From IMG/VR virus record IMGVR_UViG_3300033997_000478, positions 62,001 to 126,000 of that record: a DNA stretch of 64,000 nt; one strand, given 5' to 3'. Under the pieces are notes generated by a model. It was not told the origin of the DNA and ran no database searches. It saw nothing but the letters and a program-made list of their open reading frames with translations. This document shows, piece by piece, positions 3,640 through 44,913 of the stretch (positions are counted from its first letter, which is position 1; every line of letters starts with the position of its first letter). Position numbers and translations under genes: made by a program.

Positions 3640-3651
3640 GGGAGATAAGTA

Positions 3652-5643
3652 ATGCGTCGTTTCCATGCTCGTGAACTGGCTGCCATGCCCAAGGCCGAGC
3701 TCTGGGAGATCCCTCAGGAAAGGATCATCGTTGTCTTCGACGACGGTGAGGTGGAATGCTGGACCAGTGAGGCGCTGTACTCGGCCTACATGTGGGGGTT
3801 CTACGTGGACTTCCCCGAAACGCCGGCACTGAAGAAACATCACCTGGGCAAGCGCAAGATTGGAACCAGCACGCATCTGAACATGATCAACGAAGTTCGT
3901 TGGGATTGCCATGATGCCTACGATGGCCAGATTCGTTCGGACATCTTGAACAAGAAAGCGCTGGAATACATCAACATTGCCTACAATGACCTGAGCGAAG
4001 GAAGCGAAGCGTGGGCCACCACGCTGAGCCAGCTGGACATCAACGCGGTGATGCATCACCCGGAGATCAAGGCTGCCAACGAACAGGTCACCATCGCCGA
4101 CAAGACCATCGTGCATGCACATCGCACGATCGAACGGGTCTTGAAGGACGCCAAAGAGCTGGTGGGTAACTCCCTGGCTCTGGCGGTACAGTGCGGGCTG
4201 GTGAAGCTGGGGCAGGTGTTGCAGGTGATTGGTCCGCGAGGATCGGTGACCGACAACGACTCCAACATCTTCCCCTACCCGGTGCAGGTGGGTTTCGCAC
4301 AAGGCCTCTACCGGTTCTACGACAGCTTCATCGAGTCGCGGACGGCCTCCAAGTCGCTGACCTTCACCGAAAAGCCGCTGCAGGATACGGAGTACTTCAA
4401 CCGTAAGTTGCAGCTGCTGGCAGCGACCCTGCGTGATCTGTACGATGGCGACTGCGGTACTGAGCAATACCTGCTGTGGCAGATGGGGCCGGGCGATCTG
4501 GAAGCCTTCAAGGGTAAGTACTACCTGAAGGACGACGGGACGCTGGGCATGATTCAGAACAACGATGAATGCCGTAAGGAACTGGTAGGTAAATCGGTGC
4601 GCATCCGCTCGCCGCTGTACTGCGCCACCCCTGACTCCACGATGGTCTGTACGACCTGCTACGGTGAGATGGAGAAATCCATCCCCCACGGCACCAACAT
4701 CGGCCACGTGGCTGCCACTGCGTTGTGTAAGCAGGCCTCCCAGCGCGTGCTCTCCACCAAGCACTTGGATACCTCCGCTTCCAGCTCGGGTCTGCGCCTG
4801 TCTGAATTCGAACAGCGTTACGTTCGTCTGGGCAATGATCCGAACCTGCTGTTCCTGGCACACCGCCTGGCAGAAGGAGCGAAGATCAAGTTGTACATCT
4901 CCGCCGATGAAGCCGAGCGCATTGCAGAGGTCAAGTCGGCAGAGAACGTGGAGATCCTGCTTCCCAGCCACATCAGTGCGCTGACGCAGGTGACCTTCGT
5001 GGTGACCAAGAACGGCAAGGAAGAAGCCGAAGTCGTGCAGGTGTCCAATGGTAGTCGTACCAGCTCGCTCTCGCGCGAAATGCTGGTGCACCTGCGCACC
5101 CATGGCTGGAAGCTGCTCACCTCCGATCGTGGTGGTAGCAATGACATCGAGATCGACCTGACCGAGTGGGATCCGGATCAGCCGCTGTTTGCAACACCGC
5201 GGCGTCAGGAGAACATGCTCGATTACATGGCGACCATCGAGAAGTTCCTGAAGGCGGCGAAGAAGGGCTCTGCCCATAAGTCGCTGAAGGACTTCATGAC
5301 GGTCGATGGTGCAGCACGGGGTCTTTACGATCTGGTCAGTTCTCGCCTGTTCGTGAACTTCGTGCATCTGGAGATCCTGGTGAAGGTCTGTCAGGTCCGC
5401 TCCACGCATCACCGTGATTCGCGCATCCCGTTGATTGGCAACAAGGTGGAATTCGGTCGTTTCGACTTCACCATCTTCAGCCGCTCGGCCGGTGCGAGCA
5501 TGGCGTATCAGAATCATCGTCAGCAGTGGAATTCGCCGACGACGTATCTGACGCACCTGCGTCCGCCCCATCCGCTGGATCCCATCCTGATGCCGTTGCC
5601 GCAAACGCCATCGGTCCACTGGAAGGCGGGTAATTCGTTGTGA
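3652..5643 (+). CDS. Non-virion RNA polymerase beta' subunit, C-terminal part (phiKZ gp74-like)
   Basis: DGDCGT, IRSPLYC, CTTCYG, GTNIGHVAATALCKQASQRVLSTKH (trigger-loop region), VHLEILV. Confidence 0.92.
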   Translation: MRRFHARELAAMPKAELWEIPQERIIVVFDDGEVECWTSEALYSAYMWGFYVDFPETPALKKHHLGKRKIGTSTHLNMINEVRWDCHDAYDGQIRSDILNKKALEYINIAYNDLSEGSEAWATTLSQLDINAVMHHPEIKAANEQVTIADKTIVHAHRTIERVLKDAKELVGNSLALAVQCGLVKLGQVLQVIGPRGSVTDNDSNIFPYPVQVGFAQGLYRFYDSFIESRTASKSLTFTEKPLQDTEYFNRKLQLLAATLRDLYDGDCGTEQYLLWQMGPGDLEAFKGKYYLKDDGTLGMIQNNDECRKELVGKSVRIRSPLYCATPDSTMVCTTCYGEMEKSIPHGTNIGHVAATALCKQASQRVLSTKHLDTSASSSGLRLSEFEQRYVRLGNDPNLLFLAHRLAEGAKIKLYISADEAERIAEVKSAENVEILLPSHISALTQVTFVVTKNGKEEAEVVQVSNGSRTSSLSREMLVHLRTHGWKLLTSDRGGSNDIEIDLTEWDPDQPLFATPRRQENMLDYMATIEKFLKAAKKGSAHKSLKDFMTVDGAARGLYDLVSSRLFVNFVHLEILVKVCQVRSTHHRDSRIPLIGNKVEFGRFDFTIFSRSAGASMAYQNHRQQWNSPTTYLTHLRPPHPLDPILMPLPQTPSVHWKAGNSL

Positions 5644-5654
5644 TGTTATGACAA

Positions 5655-5680
5655 CGGCGGCGGGGTAACACCCGCCGCCT
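5655..5680 (+). terminator. Intrinsic terminator
   Basis: GGCGGCGGGG-TAACA-CCCGCCGCC hairpin followed by T-rich tract. Confidence 0.6.
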
Positions 5681-5715
5681 GAGTCGTTTCTTCTTATTTT
5701 GATTTGGAGGTTTGC

Positions 5716-7335
5716 ATGTCGGCTCCTTCTGCGGAGGGCGCAAGCAGCACGTCGAGCTTCACCCCAGCCGACATCATCAAGGCTGTCACCGTTCCCCGCG
5801 TCCGCTTGGACGTGTACAGCCATGGCATTAAGGTCAGTCGGTTCGGCGGAGAAATCCGCGCATTGCTGATTGACATGTGCCGTACCGAATGGGCCGAGTA
5901 CGGGGTGATGCAAAATCGCCACACCGGCCGTCGTGAATCGAAGATCAAGCGGGTGTTCGTTGGCACCAACCGAGCCCGTGACGTCTTCCACATCCATCGC
6001 AATCAGCTGGACCTGCTGATCCTAAGGCTGCGTCGAGCTGGGATCTCCGATCAACGTATCGAGATCATCAAGCACGAGATGTACGAACCGGTCAAGTGCG
6101 AACACAAGCGCGTGGACACCCGTCCCCCGCGAGACGTGCAGGTACCGGTGATCGAATACGTCCTAGCACCGCCTGATGCGCGCTATGCGCCGTCCAAGGT
6201 GGTTACCCTACAGACGGGTAAGGGCAAGACCTTCTTGGGCCTGTACTGCATGCGAGAGCTCGGCTCGCGCATCTGTATCGTCCTACCGGCCCGCTACATG
6301 AAGAAGTGGGTGGGCGACATCGAAGACGCCTACGGAAAGGAGAAGGGTAGCATCCTGACCATCTCCGGTCTGAAGGATCTGCGCAACGCTTTCCAGATGG
6401 TCAAAGACGGTGAGTTCAAGGCCCGCGTGGTACTGATCTCCACCACGACCATGTTCATGTATTTCAAGTACATCGAGCAGTTTGGCGTGGACGACATTGT
6501 CAAGGTCGACCCGTATGACTTCTACAAGTACTTCGGCTTTGGCGTTCGCCTGATCGACGAAGTACACGAGGAGTTCCACTGCAATTACCGCATGGACTGC
6601 TACGGCCATGTACCGTTGACGATCTCTCTGTCAGCTACCCTAGAGGCTGACCAGGAGTTCACCAACAAGATGTACCACATCGTCTGGCCGGTGGGTACGT
6701 GGGCGCCGAAGATCGAGCACCACAAGTACATCGAGATCCAGTCGCTGCAATACCGCTTCAAAGACGAGCATCTACCTAAGATCCGCTACCTGAACTTCAT
6801 GCGCCAGTACAGCCATACCGAGCTGGAAAAGTCGATCATGAAGCACAAGCCGATCTTGCGCAACTACGTGGAGATGATCCACGACATCGTCGATAAGAAG
6901 TTCATCCAAGTCCACCAGCCGGGCCAACGCTGCTTGGTGTTCGTGGCCACCAAGGACATGGCTACGATCGTGTCTGACCACCTCAAGAGTTCCTATCGGG
7001 ACAAGCTGGTTAACCGGTATATCTCTGAGGATGACTACGACCGCTTGACCGAAGCAGACATTGCGGTGTCTACGCTGAAGTCGGCCGGTACCGCAGTTGA
7101 CATCCCAGATCTTCGCGTTACCTTGATGACGACGGCCCTGAGTACCAAGCAGGGCAACGAGCAAGCGTTGGGGCGTACCCGTCCGTTGGTTAGCTATCCG
7201 GACGTTAACCCTGAGTTCCTCTTCCTCACGGCGATGAATATCGACAAGCACGTGATCTACGAGCGTGAGAAAAAAGAGAAACTGTATGGGAAGGCTTTGT
7301 CCTTTACGCCCGTCCGTACGCATTTCGTTATCTAA
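5716..7335 (+). CDS. SF2 (UvsW-like) DNA helicase (phiKZ gp75-like)
   Basis: Walker A LQTGKGKT, DEVH motif II, SAT motif III, QALGR motif VI; start moved to ATG 5716 after GGAGG. Confidence 0.92.
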   Translation: MSAPSAEGASSTSSFTPADIIKAVTVPRVRLDVYSHGIKVSRFGGEIRALLIDMCRTEWAEYGVMQNRHTGRRESKIKRVFVGTNRARDVFHIHRNQLDLLILRLRRAGISDQRIEIIKHEMYEPVKCEHKRVDTRPPRDVQVPVIEYVLAPPDARYAPSKVVTLQTGKGKTFLGLYCMRELGSRICIVLPARYMKKWVGDIEDAYGKEKGSILTISGLKDLRNAFQMVKDGEFKARVVLISTTTMFMYFKYIEQFGVDDIVKVDPYDFYKYFGFGVRLIDEVHEEFHCNYRMDCYGHVPLTISLSATLEADQEFTNKMYHIVWPVGTWAPKIEHHKYIEIQSLQYRFKDEHLPKIRYLNFMRQYSHTELEKSIMKHKPILRNYVEMIHDIVDKKFIQVHQPGQRCLVFVATKDMATIVSDHLKSSYRDKLVNRYISEDDYDRLTEADIAVSTLKSAGTAVDIPDLRVTLMTTALSTKQGNEQALGRTRPLVSYPDVNPEFLFLTAMNIDKHVIYEREKKEKLYGKALSFTPVRTHFVI

Positions 7336-7346
7336 GGGGAAGGTCG

Positions 7347-7940
7347 ATGGAGACCGCAGAACAGATCGTCAACGAAAACTTCGAAGCGGCCGCTCAAGTT
7401 GCCCCCGCCCTGCGGGAGTACCCGGACGCTTTGATTGAGCGCTACCATGCTGAAGGGGTCGACATCGACCCCGTCGCTGTCCGAGAGAACGTCATCGGCG
7501 GCATCAGCGTGCTGTGGTTGCTGATGGAAGAAAACATCACCTTCCTGATGGAGGCGTTCCCCAAGGACATGCCCGCTTCGATTGAACACTTCGGCGAGCG
7601 CTACTCGCTGGGGCATTCGCTGCTGGATGTGCCCGAAATGGAAGAAGGCTTCTCCATGTTGGCGCACTTTGTGGTCTGTTTGGCCATGAACACCTACACC
7701 ACCGAACTGTTTGACATCTACCAGGAAACTGGCGAAGGTGAGGACGATGAGTTCGATGAGTTCAGTGGTTGGCCGGTCAAGGCCGATCCCCTGATGGTCA
7801 TGGGTCACATTGAAGTGGCCCTGGCCACCATTCCCTTCGACGCCCGCTCCTTGACGGGTGTGCGAGCCTACACCAACCGCTGGTTGGGTGAGGTGTTGAT
7901 GTATCACACCAAGCCGCCGGCGAAAAGTAAGTACCACTGA
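7347..7940 (+). CDS. Hypothetical protein, acidic
   Basis: 197-aa ORF, GGAAGG RBS, host-type codon usage. Confidence 0.8.
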   Translation: METAEQIVNENFEAAAQVAPALREYPDALIERYHAEGVDIDPVAVRENVIGGISVLWLLMEENITFLMEAFPKDMPASIEHFGERYSLGHSLLDVPEMEEGFSMLAHFVVCLAMNTYTTELFDIYQETGEGEDDEFDEFSGWPVKADPLMVMGHIEVALATIPFDARSLTGVRAYTNRWLGEVLMYHTKPPAKSKYH

Positions 7941-7952
7941 AAGAGAGTCGAC

Positions 7953-8492
7953 ATGGATAGAACGTCGCAAACCCCCGATTCCGAGCGTTTGCTGGCCTAC
8001 CTGCGTGCTGACCCCAGCACGATCAGTGACGTCTACGCCCACAACCCGCATCTGCGTCAAGTGGCCACCCACGCCATCTCCCATCGTCTGCGCATGCAGC
8101 ACACCTATGGCGAGAAGGTCAGCGATCAGATCCTGGATGAGGCGGCCTCTGAAGCCTTTACGGCCACGATGCTGCTGACCACGTTGTACAACAACCGTGA
8201 GCGGGTTCTGCTGGTCAAGAACATGGGCGATGTCTTGGTATCTGAGGCGGCAACAACGTTCGTTCCTTTGGCTCGCTCCTTGCCCAGTCGCGTGTCCGAT
8301 CGAGCCCTTCCGTCGTTCGTGCGCGCGCAGATGGATGTTCATCTGTTGTGCTACTATGCCAACCAGATGCGCGAACCACGCGAGTACGTCCGTGAACTGG
8401 CCAGCGAGTTGATCATCGACAAGCAGTACATCGACAGGGCAGTGACTGAGGTCATGCAGCATCACCGCTACGTCGGCCAAACCTTCCATTGA
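7953..8492 (+). CDS. Hypothetical protein
   Basis: 179-aa ORF in operon, GAGAG RBS. Confidence 0.8.
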   Translation: MDRTSQTPDSERLLAYLRADPSTISDVYAHNPHLRQVATHAISHRLRMQHTYGEKVSDQILDEAASEAFTATMLLTTLYNNRERVLLVKNMGDVLVSEAATTFVPLARSLPSRVSDRALPSFVRAQMDVHLLCYYANQMREPREYVRELASELIIDKQYIDRAVTEVMQHHRYVGQTFH

Positions 8493-8555
8493 TTGCCCCA
8501 CCTGCGTCCTCGGGCGTAGGTGGGTTTTATTCACTACAGCAGGAGAGCAGTGCGT

Positions 8556-9107
8556 ATGAGCTTCTTTGAAACAGTTGAACTTTACTCCGAACATTACCCA
8601 GTCAAGCACCATCTGACCTTGGACCACTTCATGATGGGGCGCCTTGTCGATGCTGACACGGTAGAGGTCGAGCTCCTGTTCGGCAGTGACGGGGACAAGC
8701 CGAAGCAGGTGCTGTACAAGGACGGCCTGCTGGCCGATAGTTTTGGGGATACGATCTCCAAGGGACGGGTGACCCATCGCGCGCAGTCGATCATGACGGT
8801 GGTCCAAGGTCGGCATGGTGCGCCGTTCTATACCCCAATGGATGTGGGCGGGCTGGTTGCCTCACTGTTCTTCCAGTGGGACCAGAATCGCGAACACTAC
8901 CTCACCCATTCGCTGCAAGCCAAGGTCATCCGCGATCTGATGGGCGACCCCAATGCCGGTACCTGGACGTTGGATCGAATCCTGCAGATGGTACACAACG
9001 CCCACCGAGAGACCATCGTCCACATCAGCAACGACTATCCGGTCTCGGTACTGCTGCTTGGCTTCAACCAGAACAGCGACGACATCGCACCACCCATCAC
9101 CCGCTAA
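8556..9107 (+). CDS. Hypothetical protein
   Basis: ORF with AGGAGA upstream; start placed at ATG 8556 (MSFFETVELY). Confidence 0.75.
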   Translation: MSFFETVELYSEHYPVKHHLTLDHFMMGRLVDADTVEVELLFGSDGDKPKQVLYKDGLLADSFGDTISKGRVTHRAQSIMTVVQGRHGAPFYTPMDVGGLVASLFFQWDQNREHYLTHSLQAKVIRDLMGDPNAGTWTLDRILQMVHNAHRETIVHISNDYPVSVLLLGFNQNSDDIAPPITR

Positions 9108-9117: not shown

Positions 9118-9507
9118 ATGCCCACTCGTTTGTTGCTCCATACGGCTGTGGAAGGTCTGCCCGCCTCCCATCGTAGCTTGGCACTCCAACGCGGCTGCAT
9201 CCTCCACCTGCGGTTGATCAATGCCAAGAAGGCCATCGCCACATGGTACTCCCCGCTCGGAGATGGTGAACTGCTGTCGTATGCGAAAGACTCTTTCTAC
9301 CGCAACGAGAAAGAAGACGAAGAGATCTACGAGGTCTGGGACAATCCCTTGACGGTGCTGTTGCCTGACGGCTTGCTCAGGCACCTACCCTTCCCCTACG
9401 TTGGCGATGGCACCTACCTGCGCCGTGTACGGCATCGATTGGAGCACACCCCGATCCTGCGGCGTTACCTGAAGGAATACCATCGCTGCGAGATCTACCG
9501 CAGTTGA
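9118..9507 (+). CDS. Hypothetical protein
   Basis: AAGGAG RBS then ATG 9118 (MPTRLLLHT...), ends before a terminator. Confidence 0.75.
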   Translation: MPTRLLLHTAVEGLPASHRSLALQRGCILHLRLINAKKAIATWYSPLGDGELLSYAKDSFYRNEKEDEEIYEVWDNPLTVLLPDGLLRHLPFPYVGDGTYLRRVRHRLEHTPILRRYLKEYHRCEIYRS

Positions 9508-9515
9508 CGGCATAA

Positions 9516-9540
9516 GCCCCCTCCCAGACGGGAGGGGGCG
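9516..9540. terminator. Bidirectional intrinsic terminator
   Basis: GCCCCCTCCC-AGAC-GGGAGGGGGC between convergent genes. Confidence 0.75.
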
Positions 9541-9563
9541 TTGTGCTGCCTTTTCTTTTTGGT

Positions 9564-9821
9564 TTACGCAGCCACCGGGATATTCGGCGCCTTGTCCATC
9601 AGGTGCTTGCGGAACTCGGTCAAGACATCTTCCATCGACGGGGCCGAATGGATCTGCTGACAGATTTCCACCGCATTGACGAAACCACCCGACAGATTGA
9701 CACCTGCGGCACGCCGATAGATCTCCGGGATGTCGCGGATCATGCACAGTTCCTGAGCCGTGGTGGCCTTGGAGATGTTCATGATGATCTCAACGTTGGG
9801 ATATGTACCTTCTACGTCAAG
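9564..9821 (-). CDS. Family B DNA polymerase (exonuclease/motif-A half, phiKZ gp82-like), exon 3
   Basis: Begins LDVEGTYPN; joined to exon 2 (...HVAD) it rebuilds PolB motif A D-L-D-V-E-G-T-Y-P-N; preceded by intron terminal G at 9822. Confidence 0.88.
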   Translation of the reverse strand, partial: LDVEGTYPNVEIIMNISKATTAQELCMIRDIPEIYRRAAGVNLSGGFVNAVEICQQIHSAPSMEDVLTEFRKHLMDKAPNIPVAA

Positions 9822-11520
9822 CGAAATCTTCACATAGATTCGCTAGATCTATGTCGACGACATTTATTTTGTCGTCTGCTCCAGCTTTCACTGGATGCCG
9901 AGACTATATCTTCTACCTCTTGGGTAGGTCACTATTTCGGGACCGCTTGGTCCCTACTCCCCGCTACGGGATAGTCGTTGAACGTTCACCCTCGCAGCGT
10001 CTCACGACGGGGCGAGGTAGCTTCGCTGCTGATTGCCCATTGTAGCATCCGTCGACTTTTCAACCTTTCACGCTCGTCCTTACGGACCACGTTGTAGGGC
10101 GACGACTTTAGGGGGTTCCAGCAATTAAATGACATTCACGCTATCGATTGCTCGATAGGTGGACCTAGTTCTTCTTTCAGTTTGAAGAGGTTGAAACGAT
10201 ACTTGGATTGGTAGGTCTTCTCACCTTGAGCAAGATTGAAGACGTACACGGGCGACAAGTCGAAGTGGTGAGCTGCGGCTTGCCTGGAGGTGAAGAACTG
10301 TTCCTCATTGGTGGTGAGGTCAGTGACGACGATCCCGTCTGGTGATTTGATAGGATGGTCTTTGTAAACTGCAAGATGTCTGGCGCTGTGGTTGGGGAAT
10401 GGATCTCCACCTATCACATAGCGGAAATTGTACCCGTATGCCGGTAGGACGAGATTATCCCGAGCATGCTGGAGGATAGTGCCTGACTTTACACCGAGTA
10501 AGTCTTCCAGATGTTGGGCGCTGGTTCCGATGACGAGATCGCCAGTGAATACATTGCGGGCGACGATACCTCCGCCCGACCCATGACGACTCACCGAACC
10601 TGCATCGACTTCCGACCAGTTTGAACCGTCGTCGTATTTGAACAACAGGCGGTCGGAGAACACCTTGTTGGGACATTTACTCAACCGATACTGGATGATG
10701 TTGGGAGTCAACTTACCAGTTTGCCGATGGCATTCTGCAATACTCGGGAAGAGGTGTTCCTCGCCGGTGTTGAGGTCACGCATCCAGACAGATTGGAGAC
10801 TGGCCCTCAGGCCTGTGTCGTAGGCGTGTTGGTTATTGGTCGCATGCGTCGCCCACTCCAGGTTGTCGAGACGATCATCGCCCTTTTGACCGTTTTTATG
10901 GTTGACGACGATCTGGTTGACAGAGGCATTATATCGCTTGAACGTTAGCGACAATGCGCGATGTCTAAAAATAGTTCGACTAAAACCGCTCTCGTTGCTA
11001 ACTCTGGCGGCGCGATAACCCCCGCTGCGAACATCTTTCTCCTTCGTGACGTACCAACTCAAGACCTGCCCAGTTTCAATGTTTCTCAACTCGCCATCAC
11101 GATTGATCGCGTAGCGCGTGAAGAATGGAACGTAAAAGAATGCAGGCATTCCCTCTACTTCCAGAGGACCATGTCGAAAGCGATACGTCAGGTTTACCAC
11201 GTTGAGGTTCTTGGGGTCGCCGTCCTTAAAGAGCGGTTCGATCTCCTCCCACAGGTGCTCTTCCAGAGCAATCTGCCTATACGCTACCAGAACCACCATT
11301 CCGGCAGAGTATTTCTTTGTTCCGCCGACCCACGTCAGCTCGACCCAATGTTCACCATTTTCAAAGACAAGTGGTAGGGTTCGACCAGCACTGTCTTTGA
11401 TTTCACCGTATTGTGTCACCAAGTATCGCCGGGCTGAACCCGGCAGGTATTTCGTTTCTTCAAACATGAGATTCTCACCAAGATATGTTCACCATAACAT
11501 AGGTGAGTTAAGAACTATTA
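9822..11520 (-). mobile_element. Group I intron (IA2-like) no. 2 of the DNA polymerase gene, with HNH ORF
   Basis: Minus-strand core: P AATTGCTGGAA, Q GGCAATCAGCAGC, R GTTCAACGACTA, S AAGATATAGTCT; 5' exon ends in U (GAT), intron ends in G; splicing restores frame. Confidence 0.9.
10136..11467 (-). CDS. Intron-encoded HNH homing endonuclease
   Basis: RHRAL..TF, VNHKNGQKGDDRLDNLEWAT...N.QHA; C-terminal NUMOD1-like repeats; lower GC. Confidence 0.9.
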   Translation of the reverse strand: MFEETKYLPGSARRYLVTQYGEIKDSAGRTLPLVFENGEHWVELTWVGGTKKYSAGMVVLVAYRQIALEEHLWEEIEPLFKDGDPKNLNVVNLTYRFRHGPLEVEGMPAFFYVPFFTRYAINRDGELRNIETGQVLSWYVTKEKDVRSGGYRAARVSNESGFSRTIFRHRALSLTFKRYNASVNQIVVNHKNGQKGDDRLDNLEWATHATNNQHAYDTGLRASLQSVWMRDLNTGEEHLFPSIAECHRQTGKLTPNIIQYRLSKCPNKVFSDRLLFKYDDGSNWSEVDAGSVSRHGSGGGIVARNVFTGDLVIGTSAQHLEDLLGVKSGTILQHARDNLVLPAYGYNFRYVIGGDPFPNHSARHLAVYKDHPIKSPDGIVVTDLTTNEEQFFTSRQAAAHHFDLSPVYVFNLAQGEKTYQSKYRFNLFKLKEELGPPIEQSIA

Positions 11521-11617
11521 ATCGGCCACGTGCGCACGGCCAAAGCTCTTGATGTTAGGCAGACCCTTCAGAAGGACCAGACCGTCATCAGAGACCAGAT
11601 GGGACGGCAAGGTGACA
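11521..11617 (-). CDS. Family B DNA polymerase exon 2 (97-nt micro-exon)
   Basis: T+GTC ACC TTG CCG TCC CAT... = (I)VTLPSHLVSDDGLVLLKGLPNIKSFGRAHVAD; host-type codons between two intron cores; absent from the ORF track. Confidence 0.88.
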
Positions 11618-13102
11618 CGTTATCTTCGACCGGGGGCGTAACGCCCGGCCCGCGCCGTTACGCGCAGCTGTAGGTCTCCCTACAGACGAGACTATATCTT
11701 CCTCTCCGAGAGAGGGACACCATTTCGAGTCACTTGACTCTACAGGCTGACTAGGCCTTAGTCGTTGAACCTTCTCCTGGGTACGGAGCTTGGCTGCTGA
11801 TTGCCCAATCCTGTTCGTTGTCAAACCGTCAATACGTGCTTTCGCCGTACTTGTGGTGAACAGGCTCTAAGGGGGTTCCAGCAATTAAATGTCTTATCAC
11901 TCAGCCGTTACCGGCTGAGGGGACTTCTTTTGTATGGTAAGTTGTCTATAGCGCAATCCTTGACGGACGGCGCCTTGCCTTGCCAAGGTCGCCACGCGGA
12001 TAGGAGAGATCCCCACCTGCGTTGCTACCTCAAACTTATCACCGAAGTAGACTTCTTCATTCGTGACCGCGTCCTCTACGATAATCGCATCGGATTGTAC
12101 GTTCACTCTGCCCTTGAAGAATTCTAAATGTTTCTCTGTAAACTCAGGCCACCCTTCAAAGCCCTCAAAGTGACGAAACAACCAGCCCTTATATGGGGTT
12201 ACTGTTTTTCGACTACACTGTTGGCTAATGGTGGACTGCTGGACACCGCTGATTTCAACGGCCATGGCCATCGTCGGAACAACCACTGTCTTTTTCTCAA
12301 AGACATTGTAGATGATCAGCTCTGTATTCCGAACGGACTTATTGGCATGACTGTCCAATTCCAACCAGTCCTGATCGGCGTACTTGAACCGCCAGCCATC
12401 GTGGTAACGTTTCTGATTACCCGTGCGGGTCCGGTAAGACACCACGGTGTGACTCAAGCCCAACCGATCCACTGCTTCTTGCATGGTGTTAAAGTGCAGT
12501 TGCGAGCCAGTGCGCCAGTTCCATGCATCCACCGGTACGACCTTTTCCGAATGGAGCCCTTGGTCGTAGGCGTGCTTAACGTTCTCAGAGGGCGTGACCC
12601 ACTCTAGGTTATCCAGACGATCATCCCCTGGAATGCCATTGCGGTGGTTCACCCAACGTTCTGCCGGATGGAAGTTGTAGTCGGTGAAGGTCATTAGGAG
12701 AAGGCGATGACGTCTACCCGGTCTCTTATTACCCACGTCGTCCAATAAATTCGCCACCGCATAGCCGCCAGTGATGCGTTTTTCAGGAATAGGTTTGGTC
12801 TTTCCCCACTTCAACTCTTTAGCGGTTGAGTTACTTCTCAATCGCCCGTCACGTGAGATCAGGTAGTTGCTGAAGCCTGGAATGAAGTAGAAGCCCTTAA
12901 ACAGCCAGTGCTCTACCGGAGCTTTGAATTTGTATGTGGTGGGGCGTTCCTCGTGCTCGAGGAGGGCGATTTGATCCCAGAGTTCGGCGGGCAGGCCGAT
13001 GCTAGGGAAAAGCGCTTTGATTCTTTCTTCGGTGTTCATGTGACGCACTCGTTGTCGGTGTCACATTATAAGGCGACTTAAATACCTTTTTACTATACTG
13101 AA
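11618..13102 (-). mobile_element. Group I intron (IA2-like) no. 1 of the DNA polymerase gene, with HNH ORF
   Basis: Core: AATTGCTGGAA, GGCAATCAGCAGC, GTTCAACGACTA, AGAGTCAAGTGACTCGAAA (P7.2-like), AAGATATAGTCT; exon ends TGGAT, intron ends ...GATAACG. Confidence 0.9.
11897..13039 (-). CDS. Intron-encoded HNH homing endonuclease
   Basis: RRHRLLLMTF, VNHRNGIPGDDRLDNLEWVT.SEN..HAY; paralog of the 10136-11467 ORF; start ATG 13039 or GTG 13048. Confidence 0.9.
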   Translation of the reverse strand: MNTEERIKALFPSIGLPAELWDQIALLEHEERPTTYKFKAPVEHWLFKGFYFIPGFSNYLISRDGRLRSNSTAKELKWGKTKPIPEKRITGGYAVANLLDDVGNKRPGRRHRLLLMTFTDYNFHPAERWVNHRNGIPGDDRLDNLEWVTPSENVKHAYDQGLHSEKVVPVDAWNWRTGSQLHFNTMQEAVDRLGLSHTVVSYRTRTGNQKRYHDGWRFKYADQDWLELDSHANKSVRNTELIIYNVFEKKTVVVPTMAMAVEISGVQQSTISQQCSRKTVTPYKGWLFRHFEGFEGWPEFTEKHLEFFKGRVNVQSDAIIVEDAVTNEEVYFGDKFEVATQVGISPIRVATLARQGAVRQGLRYRQLTIQKKSPQPVTAE

Positions 13103-14535
13103 ATCCAGTCAGTGATGTCAATCACGTACTGATCGTTCTCATCGACCATCTTGTTGGACGTAGACGCTGCCACCAGACCATGCTTTTGCACCATGAAGTG
13201 CAAGTCGTCACAGGTACGACGCGGCTGGCTGGGGAAGCGCTTGTACTCGGAGAAGGTGGTCATCAGCGAGATCATCGACCGCAGGTCGGTAATCTGCTCG
13301 TCCAGAATTTCCACCGAGACGCAGTCGAAGATGTTGTAAACGCAGTATTCGATCTTGTAGTTCTTCTGCATGAACCGGTGCCACGGGCCCCTACCCGAGG
13401 TCAAGTGATCTGCTTCCTTGAACTTCAGCTTTCGAATACCCAACTCCTTCTCAAGGATGGCATCCAGACTGTAGGACGGATCCTTACCGCCGGCAATACG
13501 CAGCTTCAGGTAGACGCACATTGCATCCAGTGCGTACCACTTGGCCGGACAGATCACTTCATGCCAACGCTCTGCCGGAGCCAACGCCATGGTCTTGCCG
13601 GAGGCGGTGACCTTCTGTGCCGGACCTTCCTTGTATTCGAAGTAACGGAACTCGCGCGGGATCGAGGGATCGGAGAACACATCGGGTAGGTTGTACCCAT
13701 AGCGCTCCAGCGCCTCGATCATCTTCTTCATATCGAAGTTGATGTTCCAGAAGCTGACAAAGTCCGGACCCCATTCATGGGCGGTTTCGATGATGCGTGC
13801 CGAGCACTGGCCGGCGTTGTCGACGAACTCGATCTCCAAGTTCAGTCCACGCTGCTCGATCAGATTGACCGCCACGGTCCGTGGCTGGCTGGGGTCTTTC
13901 TTGTGCTTGGGGTTGGGTGCTTCGATGTCGCCCAGGTAGTAGTTGAACTTCTGGTAGATCTGCCGAGTGGCCTCTTCGTCGGACATGCCTTCCAAGAAGC
14001 TACGCACCACCACCAGTCGTGCCCGATCACGCATGGTGATCGAGAGCATGATGATCTCGCCGGTCTCCTCATCGAACATGTCGGTTTCCGAGTCGATCAC
14101 GGCCACCAGATTGTCCGAGACCCGATTGGGCCAACGGTTGAGGTAGTGATGCTTGATCAGTACCGGCGCTGGCACGTCCGTGCCGTAGACGTACGGACTC
14201 TGGGCAATCTGACGCAGGTCATTGCGTCCGGTCGGAATGCGACCCAAGGCACGGGTGATGGCCTGGGGCATGTTGATGTCCGAGGACTTCCATTCCTGAA
14301 GTCGCTCGATCTTTTCCCACTCCTTCTTGTCCTTATGGTTGCGATAAGGCTCTTTGGTGATGTAGAAGGGGCGCTGGTAATTGTAGATCTGCCGCAGGCG
14401 CGATTCGCGCGTACCGTCGGGCTTGTATTCGTATTCCTTGACCACCACCAGGTCATTGGGCGAGCCATCGTTGGCGGTAAAGTACAACGCGTGCTTGCAC
14501 TCAAACTCGCTCTTGGGAGGCTGCTGGTCACTCAT
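13103..14535 (-). CDS. Family B DNA polymerase (phiKZ gp82-like), exon 1: 3'-5' exonuclease domain
   Basis: ExoI IDSETD, ExoII WNINFD, YSLDAIL, ExoIII YCVYNIFD; spliced product 595 aa (13103-14535 + 11521-11617 + 9564-9821). Confidence 0.9.
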
Positions 14536-14628
14536 CTGCCTGTTACCTGTCTCTTATTGTGTCCCGGTATAGTATTGATATGAAGCGTATCTTTTCATTC
14601 TCCCTTCTCCCTCTCAGGGTCTATACCC

Positions 14629-15978
14629 ATGAAAATTCATCGTCTCCCTCCGCACCGGAGGGTCTCCATGGAGGCCCTTCAGTACCAGGGCAAGTCGATG
14701 TTCTTCTTCGATCTCATTCAGGCTGTGAACCTGGTCCGTGAAACCCACGACCTGGAAAAATTCGCAGTGGATCTGGGGAACATCATCAACCGCCACACCA
14801 AGATCTTGGTGCGCATTGTGGTGGACGAGGAGTTCGGCGCCTGCTTTGCAGAGCCGGCCTTGTTTGACGCCAGCAACCCCTACGTCAAGCTGCTCACCGC
14901 CAGCAACATCTTCGACACCAAGCTGGACCCGATCGAGCGCAATGCGCGTGCCCTGAACTTCGCAGCTGAGCTGGACGGTTGGGTGGACCTGAAGAACAAC
15001 CAGGTCGGAGGTATCTTCTCCAAGATGCTCAACACCATCCACATCAGCCGTGATGTGATCCTGCCCAATGAAGGCTATCAGCTGGCCAGCGAAGAAGCTG
15101 CCGCGGTCATCGGTCACGAGGTCGGTCACCTGTGGAGCTTCTTTGAGAAGGCGGCCAGTACGGTGGCCACCAACGTGGTGGTGGAAACGGCCACGGCCGC
15201 ACTGGCGACCACGCAGAACCCGGTCCTGCGCATGCAGATCCTGACCAAGAGCGCGGCCCGACTGGGCGCGCCTGCCAACAGCGAAACCATCAAGGCAGCT
15301 GCAGAGTCCAACGACTCGGCCGTGGTCGGCCCGCTGTTGATTCGACTGGGCGAGGAAGGTCGTCTGGAACGTCTGGGACTCAAGCCCAATACGGCCCAGG
15401 AAGCTTACCACGCTCGTTCGATCGAATACCTGGCCGATCAGTACGTGGTGCGCTTGGGTGGCGCTGTGCCGCTGGCCTCGGCCTTGCACACGCTCTCGCG
15501 CTGGCACGTGGCCGACTACGGCAAGAGCAACGCGGCCTTCCTGGCTACCCAGCTCAGCCGCTACACCCTGGTCGGCCTGATCGGTGCAGGTGCCACGCTT
15601 GTGGGCGGGCCGGCGGCGATCACCTTCTACGGTCTGATGGGACTGGTGACGCTGGTGGCCGCTGCCACGGCGCATGAAGATGACTACGACATGGACCCGA
15701 CCGAACGTTTGGGCCGTATCAAGCAGGACCTGGTACAGCTGCTCAAGATCCGCACGCTGACCACCCAGCAGCGCAAGGCCATCCTGCAAGACGTGGATGC
15801 CGTGGATGCCCTGCGCGCTGAATCCAAGTCCCACGGCGGTGTGGTGCGGTTCATCTACCGCAACATGATGCCTGCCGGTCGTCGCGCCGCCAAGGTGCGC
15901 GAATATCAGAAGGGTCTGGAAGACCTGGTCAACAACGATCTTTTCGTCATCGGTCACCGCCTCGGCGGCAGCCGCTAA
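14629..15978 (+). CDS. Virion head protein with zincin (M48-like) motifs and hydrophobic hairpin
   Basis: N-terminal RVSME processing site, HEVGH, EYLADQY, Gly-rich hydrophobic segment. Confidence 0.7.
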   Translation: MKIHRLPPHRRVSMEALQYQGKSMFFFDLIQAVNLVRETHDLEKFAVDLGNIINRHTKILVRIVVDEEFGACFAEPALFDASNPYVKLLTASNIFDTKLDPIERNARALNFAAELDGWVDLKNNQVGGIFSKMLNTIHISRDVILPNEGYQLASEEAAAVIGHEVGHLWSFFEKAASTVATNVVVETATAALATTQNPVLRMQILTKSAARLGAPANSETIKAAAESNDSAVVGPLLIRLGEEGRLERLGLKPNTAQEAYHARSIEYLADQYVVRLGGAVPLASALHTLSRWHVADYGKSNAAFLATQLSRYTLVGLIGAGATLVGGPAAITFYGLMGLVTLVAAATAHEDDYDMDPTERLGRIKQDLVQLLKIRTLTTQQRKAILQDVDAVDALRAESKSHGGVVRFIYRNMMPAGRRAAKVREYQKGLEDLVNNDLFVIGHRLGGSR

Positions 15979-42600: not shown

Positions 42601-43836
42601 ATGAGTACGCCCCATTCCACCTTCGCCGATGCCACCGAGCTCTTCGCCACCCAGGCCTTCATCTCCCATCTGGCCGATGCGGTCGAGGAGAATGTTCGCA
42701 AGGGCGATCTGCCCAAGGACATCATCGTCGCCGTTGACGGTGACAACTTGGTCAAGTTCTCCGGTGATAACTTCACCGTCAGCTGCACCAAGGTGATCGA
42801 CGATGTGCCGATCTTCGTCGTCCAGATCGCCTGCAGTCCGTCGCTGCGCGCCAAGCTCAAGGAATACCACACGCTGGAGTTCATCCACAAGCGTCTGCCG
42901 GAGTTCTTCAGCACCAGTGCTGAACAGCCCGACAGTGAGCACAACGTGCACGACATGCTCAAGGCCGCAGCGCTGATTCAGGGACGTACCATCCTCACTT
43001 CCACCTACCGCGAACCGATCGCGCTGCTGGCGGCGAACGAGCAGGATCATCATCGCGCGGTGCGTCGACTGAAGCTGGTCGAGGCAGAGTTCGAGGACAA
43101 GACCATCGTACTGGTCGGCGAGGATTTCCTGAGCACGCTCAAGTCAGCGCTGCGTGGTAGCGAAATCGAAGGTATCACCATCTCTGTCGATGACTTGGGT
43201 AACAACTACATCAAGTGGGAAACAGGTGAGGTGCATTTCCTCAAGGACGATCCGGGTATCTACACGGTCGACTTCTACACCAAGGCCGAACTGGCTTCGC
43301 TGACTCGCACCATCCTGCGCTCGCAGTACATTCAAGATACGCTCGCCCCGTACCTGCGCAATCTGCTGGATGACAACGCCGCCACCCAAGAGGTCTTGGA
43401 AGGACTGCGCAAGATCGCCCTGGCTGTCCCCACCGATCCGGAGTCCATCTCCGAACCCTTCTTCTTCCTGTACGCCAACCCGGCCGATGAGGCCACCATC
43501 CTGGAGCACCACATGAACAGCCATCACAAGAGCGAAGCCAACAACAACAACAACAACGACAAGCCGACCGCCGATGCCATCCGCGAAGCGGCAGGCGATG
43601 CGGTGGACACCGCCAAGAGCGGCATCGATCGCGCAGCTGAAGCCATCGGCAGTGCCGCCGAGAAGGTCAACGATGCAGTGCACGATGCACGTGAGCACGT
43701 GGCCGAAGCCCTGCTGAAGGAACCGACCTTCTTCGATCGCGCCACGCAGTTCACCAAGGACCACGCACGCGACATGGTCTTCGGCGCCATCGGCTTTGCC
43801 GTGGGCGTGGTTGCCACCACCATCATCAAGCGCTAA
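42601..43836 (+). CDS. Early protein with C-terminal membrane anchor (ElaB/YqjD-like tail)
   Basis: (AAC)6 poly-Asn linker, Ala-rich amphipathic repeats, terminal TM MVFGAIGFAVGVVATTII-KR. Confidence 0.75.
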   Translation: MSTPHSTFADATELFATQAFISHLADAVEENVRKGDLPKDIIVAVDGDNLVKFSGDNFTVSCTKVIDDVPIFVVQIACSPSLRAKLKEYHTLEFIHKRLPEFFSTSAEQPDSEHNVHDMLKAAALIQGRTILTSTYREPIALLAANEQDHHRAVRRLKLVEAEFEDKTIVLVGEDFLSTLKSALRGSEIEGITISVDDLGNNYIKWETGEVHFLKDDPGIYTVDFYTKAELASLTRTILRSQYIQDTLAPYLRNLLDDNAATQEVLEGLRKIALAVPTDPESISEPFFFLYANPADEATILEHHMNSHHKSEANNNNNNDKPTADAIREAAGDAVDTAKSGIDRAAEAIGSAAEKVNDAVHDAREHVAEALLKEPTFFDRATQFTKDHARDMVFGAIGFAVGVVATTIIKR

Positions 43837-43866
43837 TCGCGCCCGGCCGGTAAAAGTGGTGGAAGC

Positions 43867-43890
43867 AAAAAACTTTCACCACTATACTAC
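43867..43890 (+). promoter_or_regulatory. Putative early promoter
   Basis: AAAAAACTTTCACCACTATACTAC, third copy of the motif. Confidence 0.7.
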
Positions 43891-43955
43891 CACCGTGATA
43901 ACCCCTAGTGAAGATTCTTCGCTAGGTCCCTCAGCACCACAGAAAGGAGTGTGTC

Positions 43956-44108
43956 ATGCAAGACAACGTACAGTTCATCGATCGCAACGCCGAAGTCAAG
44001 GCGTACTGCAAGGCGCTGTTCGTCACCGCCCTGTGGGTTGGTGGGATCATCGCCATCCGCACGGCGATCACCAGCGGCTTCGACAAAGTCCTGGACAGCA
44101 CCAAGTAA
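43956..44108 (+). CDS. Small membrane protein (50 aa)
   Basis: AAGGAG RBS; MQDNVQFIDRNAEVKAYCKALFVTALWVGGIIAIRTAITSGFDKVLDSTK*; below the ORF-track cutoff. Confidence 0.7.
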   Translation: MQDNVQFIDRNAEVKAYCKALFVTALWVGGIIAIRTAITSGFDKVLDSTK

Positions 44109-44139
44109 TACCTCCCTCCGTCATACAAGGACCGCAGTC

Positions 44140-44295
44140 ATGTTCAACAAGAAGAAGACCGTCACCCTCGACGACCTGCTGCCGAAGAATAAAAACATGC
44201 GCTACTTCATCGGCACCTTCGGTTTCCTCTGCGCCATGGGTGCGGTGATCGAGATCACCAGCCGCACCACTGCCGCTGTCATCGAAGCGCTGTAA
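44140..44295 (+). CDS. Small membrane protein (51 aa)
   Basis: AAGGA RBS; MFNKKKTVTLDDLL...YFIGTFGFLCAMGAVIEI. Confidence 0.7.
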   Translation: MFNKKKTVTLDDLLPKNKNMRYFIGTFGFLCAMGAVIEITSRTTAAVIEAL

Positions 44296-44391
44296 ACCAT
44301 GGCCGCCAGCATACGCGCAGAGCAGCTGCTGGCGGCTGCTCTGCGTCACCAAGATGTACCACCAGCCCATTCCAACGAGAACGAGAACATC

Positions 44392-44781: not shown

Positions 44782-44804
44782 GGCGAGCGCTGAGCAGTAA
44801 CAAC

Positions 44805-44830
44805 GCCCTCCACCCTTCGGGGTGGAGGGC
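44805..44830 (+). terminator. Intrinsic terminator, UUCG hairpin
   Basis: GCCCTCCACCC-TTCG-GGGTGGAGGGC. Confidence 0.75.
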
Positions 44831-44913
44831 TTACGCCGGTGGTCTTTTCTTTTTCTCTCCAGCGACCAGAGCGATGATATGACTGACATTTAGAACCCAT
44901 CCTAGGAGCACGT

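What the first reader, a model, noticed from the sequence alone, without database searches (positions are those of the whole stretch)
9564..14535. DNA polymerase half-gene split into three exons with a 97-nt micro-exon; second intron sits inside motif A
Seen: splicing 13103^11617 and 11521^9821 gives ...TDWI|VTLPSHLVSDDGLVLLKGLPNIKSFGRAHVAD|LDVEGTYPN..., a 595-aa protein. Both junctions obey the U|...G| rule and restore frame. The track calls exon 1 and exon 3 separate genes and misses exon 2. Established: phiKZ-type PolB is already split between two genes. Inference: active polymerase needs two self-splicing events plus a partner subunit encoded elsewhere, making splicing a potential control point for replication.
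Basis: partly seen in the sequence, partly recalled or inferred. Interest (0 to 1): 0.7.

Follow-up and report, generated by a model that had tools for sequence, protein, structure and literature searches.

The report
Two self-splicing introns in polymerase gene

Summary
On the minus strand, 14535..13103 + 11617..11521 + 9821..9564 join to 1788 nt, encoding 595 aa. An uninterrupted allele in a close relative (L007/L008) aligns to this without gaps: 1788/1788 nt, 89.9% nt and 95% aa identity. Homology breaks exactly at the two proposed junctions.

Both insertions score above Rfam's group I intron threshold (71.8 and 63.2 bits). They share a core fold backed by covariation in nine related introns. 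Each follows an exon U and ends in G. Each carries an intact I-HmuI-like HNH endonuclease gene between the 5' splice site and the guide sequence.

The host gene is the orthologue of phiKZ gp82 (DNAP-N). Intron 1 splits codon 478. Intron 2 lies between codons 510 and 511, two codons before the motif A catalytic Asp. The partner half (DNAP-C, 739 aa) and a chimallin homologue lie elsewhere in the 324-kb genome.

Intron 2 is 98.6% identical in a phage whose exons are only 60-71% identical, so it moved recently.

No RNA evidence of splicing was obtainable, and "control point" remains speculation. The site-2 intron is already noted for phage Goslar. Multi-intron polymerase genes with small exons are known in other phages.

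The parts
13103..14535 (-). Exon 1 of DNAP-N (codons 1-477 plus 2 bases of codon 478): N-terminal domain and 3'-5' exonuclease domain
   Evidence: 480-aa ORF. phrog_3011 DNA polymerase, E 3.7e-173. Exonuclease residues D148/E150/D268/D404 align with phiKZ-type D151/E153/D251/D452. Nucleotide homology to RTH11 and L007 stops at 13103/13102.
11618..13102 (-). Intron 1, group I, 1485 nt, inserted in codon 478 (phase 2) within the conserved DWI|VTLPS
   Evidence: Absent from the intron-less alleles L007/L008 and from RTH11. It follows an exon U and ends in G. An in-frame stop lies 3 codons into the intron.
11897..13048 (-). Homing endonuclease gene 1 (383 aa, HNH), lying in the P1 loop of intron 1; its last ~55 nt overlap the guide sequence and P2
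   Evidence: Pfam HNH_3, E 5e-6. phrog_59, E 1.5e-35. Motif NHRNG..DDRLDNLEWVT..N intact. 33% identical to HEG 2.
11668..11951 (-). Ribozyme core of intron 1 (P2-P9); the internal guide sequence GAAGUCC is at 11927..11921
   Evidence: RF00028 71.8 bits (threshold 50), E 2.8e-17. Covariation in alignment A1. GGAU|UUC (13106..13100) pairs with GAAGUCC, placing U13103 opposite G11924.
11521..11617 (-). Exon 2, a 97-nt micro-exon (last base of codon 478 through codon 510: (I)VTLPSHLV...RAHVAD)
   Evidence: 89.6% nt identity to L007 4434-4529. The same micro-exon is present in L011 and L014. A 103-nt version is present in L094.
9822..11520 (-). Intron 2, group I, 1699 nt, inserted between codons 510 and 511 (HVAD|LDVEGTYPN), two codons before the motif A Asp
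   Evidence: Absent from L007/L008/RTH11. It follows an exon U and ends in G. TAA TAG stops come immediately after the 5' splice site. 98.6% identical (1675/1699, no gaps) to intron 2 of L011.
10136..11467 (-). Homing endonuclease gene 2 (443 aa, I-HmuI-like HNH), lying in the P1 loop of intron 2
   Evidence: Pfam HNH_3, E 3e-8. I-HmuI (1U3E), E 8e-4. 36-38% identical to Goslar gp069 and to the HPP-Temi HNH, both of which sit in DNAP-N introns. HNH motif intact.
9879..10180 (-). Ribozyme core of intron 2; guide sequence GGUC(C) at 10165..10161 and P1 extension AAGAACUA at 10173..10166
   Evidence: RF00028 63.2 bits, E 1e-14. Covariation. GAU|U pairs with GGUC, and UAGUUCUU pairs with AAGAACUA.
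9564..9821 (-). Exon 3 (codons 511-595 plus stop): the motif A catalytic Asp D512, the YPN residues, and the C-terminal segment that in phiKZ gp82 folds into the palm-insertion domain together with DNAP-C
   Evidence: Alignment with PA7/phiKZ-type gp82. RB69 motif A alignment. PMC13648687, section 5.

Best explanation
The window carries the gene for DNAP-N, the N-terminal subunit (phiKZ gp82 type) of the two-subunit B-family DNA polymerase of an uncultured chimallivirus-like jumbo phage. The genome is 324 kb, and the nearest cultured relatives are Xanthomonas phages RTH11 and LucasX.

Two related mobile group I introns interrupt the gene. They look like subgroup IA, with two hairpins between P7 and P3'. 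The primary transcript (about 5 kb) must lose both introns by the usual guanosine-initiated two-step transesterification.

In each intron, a guide sequence containing GUCC lies just 5' of P2. It pairs with the exon end ..GAU so that the last exon U forms the U.G wobble, and the intron's terminal G marks the 3' splice site. Each endonuclease gene sits in the loop of a long P1 helix, so P1 closes over 1.1-1.3 kb.

Only the doubly spliced mRNA encodes the 595-aa subunit with the motif A Asp (D512) and the C-terminal segment that, in phiKZ, folds together with DNAP-C. That subunit then pairs with the intact 739-aa DNAP-C, encoded about 26 kb away.

The two HNH endonucleases most likely nick or cut intron-less alleles of co-infecting relatives at these conserved codons, and repair then copies the intron in (homing).

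Shown here: the anatomy, the exact junctions, conservation of the ribozyme fold, intact endonuclease motifs, and recent horizontal spread of intron 2. Inferred: self-splicing activity, endonuclease activity and specificity, and assembly with DNAP-C.
For: - **Ribozymes.** RF00028 hits score above threshold on both insertions.
- **Fold.** In nine homologous introns, 92.3% of cells pair, against 32-46% when the partner columns are slid. 42 of 64 pairs show compensatory changes, including in the P7 pseudoknot, and 0 of 500 shuffles reach the observed values.
- **Junctions.** The intron-less allele is colinear base for base, and homology breaks exactly at the junctions. RTH11 is colinear as well. 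At junction 2 this phage has GAT where the intron-less allele has the synonymous GAC, that is, the U that the splice site needs.
- **P1.** All nine DNAP-N introns examined have ..GAU| at the exon end and GUCC just 5' of P2. In the ORF-less relative L094, the same P1 forms as a short local hairpin.
- **Host gene.** The catalytic residues of DNAP-N are all aligned and invariant. RB69 motif A aligns. The phiKZ gp82+gp50 structure and D562 come from PMC13648687.
- **Genome context.** DNAP-C is intact, and a chimallin homologue is present.
- **Endonucleases.**
- **Mobility.** Intron 2 is 98.6% identical between this phage and L011, while exons are 60-71% and intron 1 is 71% identical. L014 has an endonuclease-less derivative of intron 2. 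Occupancy across 80 IMG/VR loci is patchy.
- **Same site in a cultured phage.** The same site, with a related endonuclease, is described as a self-splicing intron in Goslar.
Against: - No RNA evidence. The only RNA-labelled public runs holding this sequence are kept as assembled contigs. They cover intron and exon alike, show no spliced joints, and may be DNA.
- P1 of intron 2 has only three exon base pairs (GAU/GUC).
- P1 duplex energies are not significantly better than those of shuffled sequence (fractions 0.02-0.26). P1 therefore rests on positional conservation and on covariation seen by eye.
- A P1 closed over more than 1 kb might fold slowly.
- HEG 1 gave no hit to a solved structure.
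Confidence: 0.9

Rival explanations
1. Genes in pieces without RNA splicing. The endonuclease genes have fractured the polymerase gene, and the 480-aa, ~30-aa and ~85-aa fragments are translated separately and assemble non-covalently. From memory, this is how Aeromonas phage Aeh1 nrdA (split by mobE) and some T4-like gp43 genes are arranged.
For: The enzyme already tolerates one split, into DNAP-N and DNAP-C. Exon 3 is preceded by an in-frame GTG 12 nt inside intron 2, giving the ORF 9833..9564. No spliced RNA was seen.
Against: Complete, covarying group I ribozymes sit immediately upstream of each downstream exon. The junctions obey the U/G rules in nine introns. Junction 1 splits a codon, so exon 2 has no frame of its own that begins at the junction. 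No ribosome-binding site is evident before the micro-exon or exon 3. A ~30-aa strand just before the catalytic Asp would be an implausible free subunit.
Confidence: 0.04
2. Dead introns. The insertions are real but one ribozyme no longer splices, so this copy of the gene is a pseudogene in a defective or dying lineage.
For: The sequence comes from a metagenome, so viability is unproven. Intron 2 has a short exon pairing.
Against: The genome is complete, with terminal repeats. All exon codons are intact, and differences from the intron-less allele are mostly synonymous (180 nt but only 30 aa changes). Intron 1 has diverged about 29% from its L011 and L014 counterparts while keeping its pairs. 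Near-identical sequence is held by many unrelated samples.
Confidence: 0.03
3. Regulated splicing. Beyond being selfish DNA, the two introns (through splicing order, efficiency or exon skipping) gate the amount of full-length DNAP-N and so time replication. This is the reader's control-point idea, and it does not exclude the main explanation.
For: Only the doubly spliced RNA encodes motif A. The two guide sequences are similar: intron 2's GGUCC pairs with the end of exon 1 (GGAU) as readily as with its own exon, so exon skipping of the kind seen in Twort and SIOphi (PMC11878797) is chemically plausible. The endonuclease reading frames overlap the guide sequence and P2, so translating them would compete with ribozyme folding.
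Against: A 90%-identical relative does without both introns, as do 69 of 80 related loci. The introns are therefore dispensable. No regulatory element was found.
Confidence: 0.1
4. Metagenome assembly chimera. The intron sequences were joined into the polymerase gene by mis-assembly across conserved ribozyme cores.
For: Ribozyme cores are repeated four times in the genome and are very abundant in some samples.
Against: Three runs hold 97-100% of the sampled words of the 5.1-kb stretch. Contigs from other runs bridge exon-intron borders, for example X4 record 16 (11394-13114) and X5 records 20-22. Independent assemblies L011, L014 and L094 show the same layout.
Confidence: 0.01

Closest known systems
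Escherichia phage Goslar DNAP-N (gp068) intron carrying homing endonuclease gp069
   Same: Same phage family and same gene. Same insertion point (VAD|LD, my site 2). A group I core is present (RF00028 44.7 bits). The NUMOD/HNH endonuclease is 36% identical to HEG 2. Already described as a self-splicing intron in the Methods of bioRxiv 10.64898/2026.10.01.755736.
   Different: Goslar has this one intron only. The window has a second, older intron 97 nt upstream.
Pseudomonas phage HPP-Temi DNAP-N intron (annotated only as separate CDSs)
   Same: Group I intron (59.2 bits) with an HNH endonuclease 38% identical to HEG 2, in the same gene.
   Different: It is inserted two codons further on (ADLD|IV, site 2b), and it is a single intron.
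PhiPA3 gp210 and phiKZ gp56/gp72 introns in RNA polymerase subunit genes
   Same: Chimalliviruses; group I introns with HNH endonucleases of the same broad family, inserted in conserved sites of essential enzymes. The ribozyme core of intron 1 is 76% identical to a PhiPA3 intron core. gp210 was shown to act in phage-phage competition (PMC11620839).
   Different: The host gene differs (RNA polymerase, not DNA polymerase). This genome has two such RNA polymerase introns as well.
Multi-intron DNA polymerase genes of Herelleviridae (Bastillevirinae; Staphylococcus phage K from memory) and Twort orf142
   Same: Two or three group I introns in one phage gene, small internal exons, HNH endonucleases and exon skipping (PMC11878797).
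   Different: Those are phages of Bacillota, their polymerase genes are not homologous to DNAP-N at these sites, and the enzyme is not already split into two subunits.
SPO1 / Bastille DNA polymerase introns with I-HmuI / I-BasI
   Same: An I-HmuI-type HNH endonuclease carried by a group I intron in a polymerase gene. HEG 2 matches I-HmuI (1U3E), E 8e-4.
   Different: The similarity is distant, and whether the window's enzymes nick or cut both strands is unknown.

Membership tests
Group I intron (Rfam RF00028) | Covariance-model score at or above the curated threshold | tested here: met
   71.8 and 63.2 bits against a threshold of 50; the same result in the whole-genome scan.
Group I intron (Rfam RF00028) | Conserved core helices P3-P9, including the P3/P7 pseudoknot, supported by covariation | tested here: met
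   Alignment A1 of nine introns: 92.3% of cells paired against 32-46% when slid; 42 of 64 pairs with compensatory change. P7 changes from GACUA/UAGUC to GAUCA/UGAUC in L012.
Group I intron (Rfam RF00028) | 5' splice site after a U that forms a U.G wobble with the internal guide sequence in P1 | tested here: met
   U13103 pairs with G11924, and U11521 with G10164. The same ..GAU| / GUCC anchor occurs in all nine introns. Duplex energy alone is not significant against shuffles.
Group I intron (Rfam RF00028) | Intron ends in G (omega G) and exon ligation restores the reading frame precisely | tested here: met
   G11618 and G9822. The joined exons equal the intron-less allele in length, with no gaps.
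Group I intron (Rfam RF00028) | Self-splicing with guanosine, in vitro or in vivo | not testable with these tools
   The RNA-labelled runs are held only as contigs and show no joints. No cultured host is known.
Group I intron, subgroup IA (typical of phages) | Extra P7.1/P7.2 hairpins between P7 and P3' | tested here: inconclusive
   About 55 nt lie between GACUA and P3'. One hairpin there covaries (columns 331-347), and a second can be drawn by eye. No subgroup-specific model was available.
HNH homing endonuclease, I-HmuI type | HNH_3 domain with intact catalytic motif | tested here: met
   Pfam HNH_3 in both proteins. NH(K/R)NG..DDRLDNLEW.T...N present in both. phrog_59.
HNH homing endonuclease, I-HmuI type | Sequence similarity to I-HmuI itself | tested here: inconclusive
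   HEG 2 matches 1U3E at E 8e-4 over the N-terminal domain and the HNH motif. HEG 1 has no PDB hit but is 33% identical to HEG 2.
HNH homing endonuclease, I-HmuI type | Cleaves the intron-less allele near the insertion site and drives homing | not testable with these tools
   Indirect only: intron 2 is 98.6% identical across hosts whose exons are 60-71% identical, and site occupancy is patchy.
Chimallivirus split B-family DNA polymerase, N-terminal subunit (phiKZ gp82 / DNAP-N) | Colinear homology to gp82-type proteins, with exonuclease and motif A catalytic residues | tested here: met
   All five catalytic columns are invariant in the alignment with PA7 gp82-like and 10 others. phrog_3011. 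The profile hits RB69 polymerase at E 2.4e-3.
Chimallivirus split B-family DNA polymerase, N-terminal subunit (phiKZ gp82 / DNAP-N) | A separate DNAP-C gene (gp50 type) with motif C in the same genome | tested here: met
   G000:43423-45642, 739 aa, 36% identical over the full length to phiKZ gp50, with SDTDS conserved.
Chimallivirus split B-family DNA polymerase, N-terminal subunit (phiKZ gp82 / DNAP-N) | The genome encodes the nuclear-shell protein chimallin | tested here: met
   A homologue of phiKZ gp54 at G000:47604-49001, E 1.5e-33, in a 643-aa open frame.
Chimallivirus split B-family DNA polymerase, N-terminal subunit (phiKZ gp82 / DNAP-N) | Forms a 1:1 active complex with DNAP-C | not tested
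   Shown for phiKZ and Goslar in preprints; not modelled here.

The most novel reading that the evidence does not exclude
The two introns have near-identical guide sequences, and intron 2's guide fits the end of exon 1 as well as its own exon. They could therefore cross-react, so that splicing order or exon skipping sets the ratio of full-length DNAP-N to a 480-aa product that keeps only the exonuclease domain. In a nucleus-forming phage this would couple the onset of replication to RNA processing. In the same reading, the two endonucleases would act as weapons that cut the polymerase active-site codons of intron-less competitors.
Probability: 0.1. Interest if true: 0.6.

Novelty: new member of a known kind. 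Interest (0 to 1): 0.35.

Why it matters
- **Annotation.** Gene callers split this essential gene into two polymerase fragments plus two endonucleases and miss the 97-nt exon. The same error sits in the GenBank records of Goslar and HPP-Temi and in the gene calls of the metagenomic relatives L011 and L014. Correct exon joins are needed to model or express chimallivirus replicases.
- **Biology.** The survey defines a 35-codon hot spot around motif A of DNAP-N with three distinct insertion points. In 11 of 80 related IMG/VR loci, and in the Goslar and HPP-Temi records, these points hold large endonuclease-bearing or small ORF-less introns.
- **Stages of the homing cycle.** The relatives capture several stages. 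Intron 1 has diverged about as much as its host gene. Intron 2 is 98.6% identical across hosts whose exons are about 30-40% diverged. One derivative has lost its endonuclease. Close relatives are intron-free.
- **A natural test bed.** Together these allow tests of intron-endonuclease competition between nucleus-forming phages, as shown for PhiPA3 gp210.
- **Limits.** None of this changes what is known about how group I introns or split polymerases work.

Tried and rejected
- **RNA runs.** Reads or contigs of four RNA-labelled runs were laid on 9500-14600. Only Logan contigs were available. Introns were covered like exons, and there were no joints at the splice sites. The very high depth at 11723-11893 and 9842-10012 comes from conserved ribozyme cores of other organisms. 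This gives no information on splicing.
- **DNA runs.** Four DNA runs with partial word share were laid in the hope of finding intron-less DNA joints. None appeared; the low share was fragmentary coverage.
- **Pfam.** No family was found for the exon 1 or exon 3 products.
- **PDB by single sequence.** phmmer of the intron-less protein found nothing. Only a 19-sequence profile reached RB69 and T4 polymerase, weakly.
- **P1 energies.** RNAduplex energies of the P1 partners against shuffled guide regions were not significant, so I do not use energy as evidence.
- **Longer homologues.** The C-terminal tails of the longer homologues (650-936 aa) are neither endonuclease nor DNAP-C fusions.
- **Serratia phage 2050HW.** The related intron core there lies in an RNA polymerase gene, not in DNAP-N.
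- **Papers not held.** The Twort papers (PMC22036, PMC113830) are not in the library. Statements about Twort rest on PMC11878797 and on memory.
- **Complex prediction.** I did not run complex prediction, because gp82-gp50 binding is already shown experimentally for phiKZ.
Full report
**What is there**

On the minus strand of 9564-14535 the ORF list shows five frames:
- a 480-aa frame (14535..13093);
- a 383-aa frame (13048..11897);
- a 30-aa frame inside 11617..11518;
- a 443-aa frame (11467..10136);
- an 89-aa frame (9833..9564).

Joining 14535..13103, 11617..11521 and 9821..9564 gives 1433 + 97 + 258 = 1788 nt, in frame. Both upstream exons end in T and both insertions end in G. Intron 1 is 1485 nt (13102..11618) and intron 2 is 1699 nt (11520..9822).

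**Is it more than chance**

Yes, decisively.
- The uninterrupted 583-aa DNA polymerase of Xanthomonas phage RTH11 aligns with the joined product at 68% identity, with no gap at either junction.
- A protein search found P0017, a 595-aa protein that is 95% identical with no gaps.
- P0017 is encoded by an uninterrupted gene on two independent contigs, L007 and L008.
- At the nucleotide level, L007 matches window 14700-13102, then 11617-11522, then 9821-9451.
- The ungapped comparison of the two coding sequences is 1788 vs 1788 nt at 89.9% identity, with 180 nt but only 30 aa differences.
- The one-base ambiguity at junction 1 (T13102 or T11617) is resolved by the requirement for a terminal G.
- At junction 2 the window has GAT where the intron-less allele has the synonymous GAC. 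The intron-bearing allele thus carries the U that a group I 5' splice site requires.

**What the insertions are**

Rfam's group I intron model scores 71.8 bits (11951..11668) and 63.2 bits (10180..9879) against a threshold of 50.

I aligned these two cores with seven homologous introns: from the relatives L011, L014 and L012, from phage HPP-Temi, and from the two other introns of this genome. RNAalifold recovered P2, P3, P4, P5, P5a, P6, a P7.x hairpin, P8, P9 and P9.x. I then added the P7 pseudoknot.
- 92.3% of cells form standard pairs, against 32-46% when the 3' partners are slid by 1-3 columns.
- 42 of 64 pairs show changes on both sides, against 11-17 in the slid controls.
- None of 500 shuffles reaches the observed values.
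- P7 itself covaries (GACUA/UAGUC becomes GAUCA/UGAUC in L012).

Both ribozyme cores lie downstream of the endonuclease ORFs, so the guide sequence is more than 1.1 kb from the 5' splice site.
- In intron 1, GGAU|UUC (13106..13100) pairs with GAAGUCC (11927..11921), placing U13103 opposite G11924. The helix continues as GUAU-A-GUAA with UUAC-C-AUAC.
- In intron 2, GAU|U pairs with GGUC (10165..10162). After an AA bulge, UAGUUCUU pairs with AAGAACUA (10173..10166).
- The same anchor, exon ..GAU| opposite a GUCC just 5' of P2, is found in all nine DNAP-N introns examined. The P1 extensions differ in compensatory ways: window AGUUC/GAACU against L014 AGCUC/GAGCU.
- In the ORF-less relative L094, the same P1 is a short local hairpin, and the Rfam match starts right at the splice site.

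I therefore read the endonuclease genes as insertions in the P1 loop. Duplex energies alone were not better than shuffles, so this rests on position and covariation.

In-frame stops follow both 5' splice sites, three codons into intron 1 and immediately (TAA TAG) in intron 2. The last ~55 nt of each endonuclease frame overlap the guide sequence and P2.

**The endonucleases**

- Both ORFs carry Pfam HNH_3 and match phrog_59.
- Both keep the NH(K/R)NG..DDRLDNLEW.T...N motif.
- They are 33% identical to each other, E 4e-54.
- HEG 2 matches I-HmuI (1U3E) at E 8e-4; HEG 1 has no PDB hit.
- HEG 2's nearest cultured relatives are the HNH proteins of Pseudomonas phage HPP-Temi (38%) and Escherichia phage Goslar gp069 (36%). 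Both sit in introns of the same polymerase gene.

**The host gene**

A preprint shows that the phiKZ polymerase is a 1:1 complex of DNAP-N (gp82, 638 aa) and DNAP-C (gp50, 731 aa). The motif A Asp is gp82 D562, and the exonuclease residues are D151, E153, D251 and D452 (PMC13648687).

I aligned the joined product with the 638-aa gp82-type protein of the phikzvirus PA7 and ten other homologues. Those five residues fall on D512, D148, E150, D268 and D404, all in invariant columns. A 19-sequence profile reaches RB69 polymerase (E 2.4e-3) and aligns rahvaDlDvegtYPn with RB69 YKYVMSFDLTSLYPS.

- Intron 2 lies between codons 510 and 511, two codons before the catalytic Asp.
- Intron 1 splits codon 478 in the invariant DWI|VTLPS.
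- Unspliced RNA encodes 480 aa; RNA lacking only intron 1 encodes 510 aa ending HVAD; an exon-skipped RNA encodes 480 aa. All three lack D512 and the C-terminal segment that, in phiKZ, forms the palm-insertion domain together with DNAP-C.

**Genome context**

- The window is bases 62001-126000 of a 324,428-bp IMG/VR virus record with terminal repeats.
- DNAP-C is intact at 43423-45642: 739 aa, 36% identical over the full length to phiKZ gp50, with SDTDS conserved.
- A chimallin homologue lies at 47604-49001, E 1.5e-33.
- The genome's two other group I introns interrupt RNA polymerase beta-subunit genes, as in phiKZ and PhiPA3.

**Evolutionary picture**

- Contig L011 (exon 1 65% aa identical) has the same three-exon layout, with introns of 1496 and 1699 nt and a 97-nt micro-exon.
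- L014 has it too, but its intron 2 is only 738 nt and has no full endonuclease gene.
- Between the window and L011, the exons are 60-71% identical and intron 1 is 71% identical. Intron 2 is 98.6% identical (1675/1699, no gaps). Intron 2 therefore moved recently between diverged phages, while intron 1 has diverged in step with its host gene.
- The window's closest relative (L007) lacks both introns.
- In 80 IMG/VR loci encoding DNAP-N, 69 are uninterrupted and 11 are interrupted:
  - at site 1: L085, L091, L095;
  - at site 2, large introns: L065, L073, L088;
  - at site 2, small ORF-less introns: L066, L071, L076, L090;
  - at both sites: L094, with site 1 plus site 2b, ORF-less introns scoring 86.7 and 91.8 bits, and a 103-nt micro-exon.
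- Site 2b (ADLD|) is also used in L012 and HPP-Temi.
- Seven of the 120 closest database homologues are truncated at site 1.

**RNA evidence**

None. Public runs holding the sequence are mostly DNA metagenomes (subsurface, sediment, soil, biofilm, wastewater). Those labelled RNA are kept only as assembled contigs. They cover introns and exons alike and show no splice joints. Four DNA runs showed no intron-less joints.

**Comparison with what is known**

- The Goslar DNAP-N intron at this same site 2 is already stated to be a self-splicing intron carrying gp069, in the Methods of bioRxiv 10.64898/2026.10.01.755736.
- Introns with HNH endonucleases in chimallivirus RNA polymerase genes are established, and one (PhiPA3 gp210) acts in interference competition (PMC11620839).
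- DNA polymerase genes with two or three group I introns, a small exon between introns, exon skipping, and the idea of introns as "on-switches" are all described for Bastillevirinae (PMC11878797).
- In the papers and records I searched, I did not find a description of the site 1 intron, of the double-intron micro-exon arrangement in DNAP-N, or of the three-site hot spot.

**Verdict**

It is a new member of a known kind. The regulatory inference is untested, and it is weakened by the fact that close relatives do without both introns.

Noticed in passing
G000:C1:3875-4179 (+) = L002 1501-1805, and G000:C1:321925-322255 (+) = L005 1501-1831 (outside the window): The genome has two more group I introns (74.1 and 62.6 bits). 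Both interrupt RNA polymerase beta-subunit genes (phrog_3148, phrog_2986). The first carries a 307-aa I-HmuI-like HNH/NUMOD endonuclease.
   Followed up: partly
window 13092-13121 (-): A strong sigma-70-like promoter match (TTGACA, 18 nt, TATAGT; 11 of 12) straddles the exon 1/intron 1 junction, 44 nt upstream of the HEG 1 start codon. The -10 element is not conserved in L011, and the total number of such matches in the region is not above shuffles. It could be chance or an endonuclease promoter.
   Followed up: partly
window 11459-11520 and 13040-13102 (-): Hairpins lie just upstream of both endonuclease start codons. In intron 2, CUCACC...GGUGAG sequesters the purine-rich stretch 7 nt before the AUG. 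This might limit endonuclease translation from the precursor.
   Followed up: no
window 5704-7335 (+) compared with L011 13310-end, L012 10364-12949 and L014 12016-end: Several relatives have an 860-880-aa protein with a LAGLIDADG_3 domain (a probable intein) a few genes from the polymerase; RTH11 annotates an 879-aa helicase there. The window's ResIII helicase-like ORF is only 543 aa and has no such domain.
   Followed up: partly
window 9500-14600; runs X7 and X18: Two runs labelled with a single organism ('organism A'), not a metagenome, hold 51% and 14% of the words of this stretch, at 95-100% identity in pieces. That organism could be a host or a contaminated culture. Near-identical sequence also turns up in subsurface, marine sediment, soil, biofilm, indoor and wastewater samples.
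   Followed up: no
X4 record 16 and X7 record 26, mapping to window 11394-13114 and 11576-11831: Contigs from other samples match intron 1 and the micro-exon, then run on into unlike sequence where this window has the body of HEG 2 or HEG 1. Variants with different or missing endonuclease genes therefore circulate.
   Followed up: no
L010 (PA7) and other phikzviruses: The DNAP-N match comes in two pieces spanning about 200 extra bases. This fits the 'little finger' insertion (gp82 residues 350-415) reported only for Pseudomonas chimalliviruses in PMC13648687. It is not an intron.
   Followed up: partly
window 7332-8816 (-), 3544-5997 (-) and 14614-15957 (-): Long ORFs antisense to the real genes, in GC-rich stretches. 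Their translations look like compositional artefacts, not genes.
   Followed up: no
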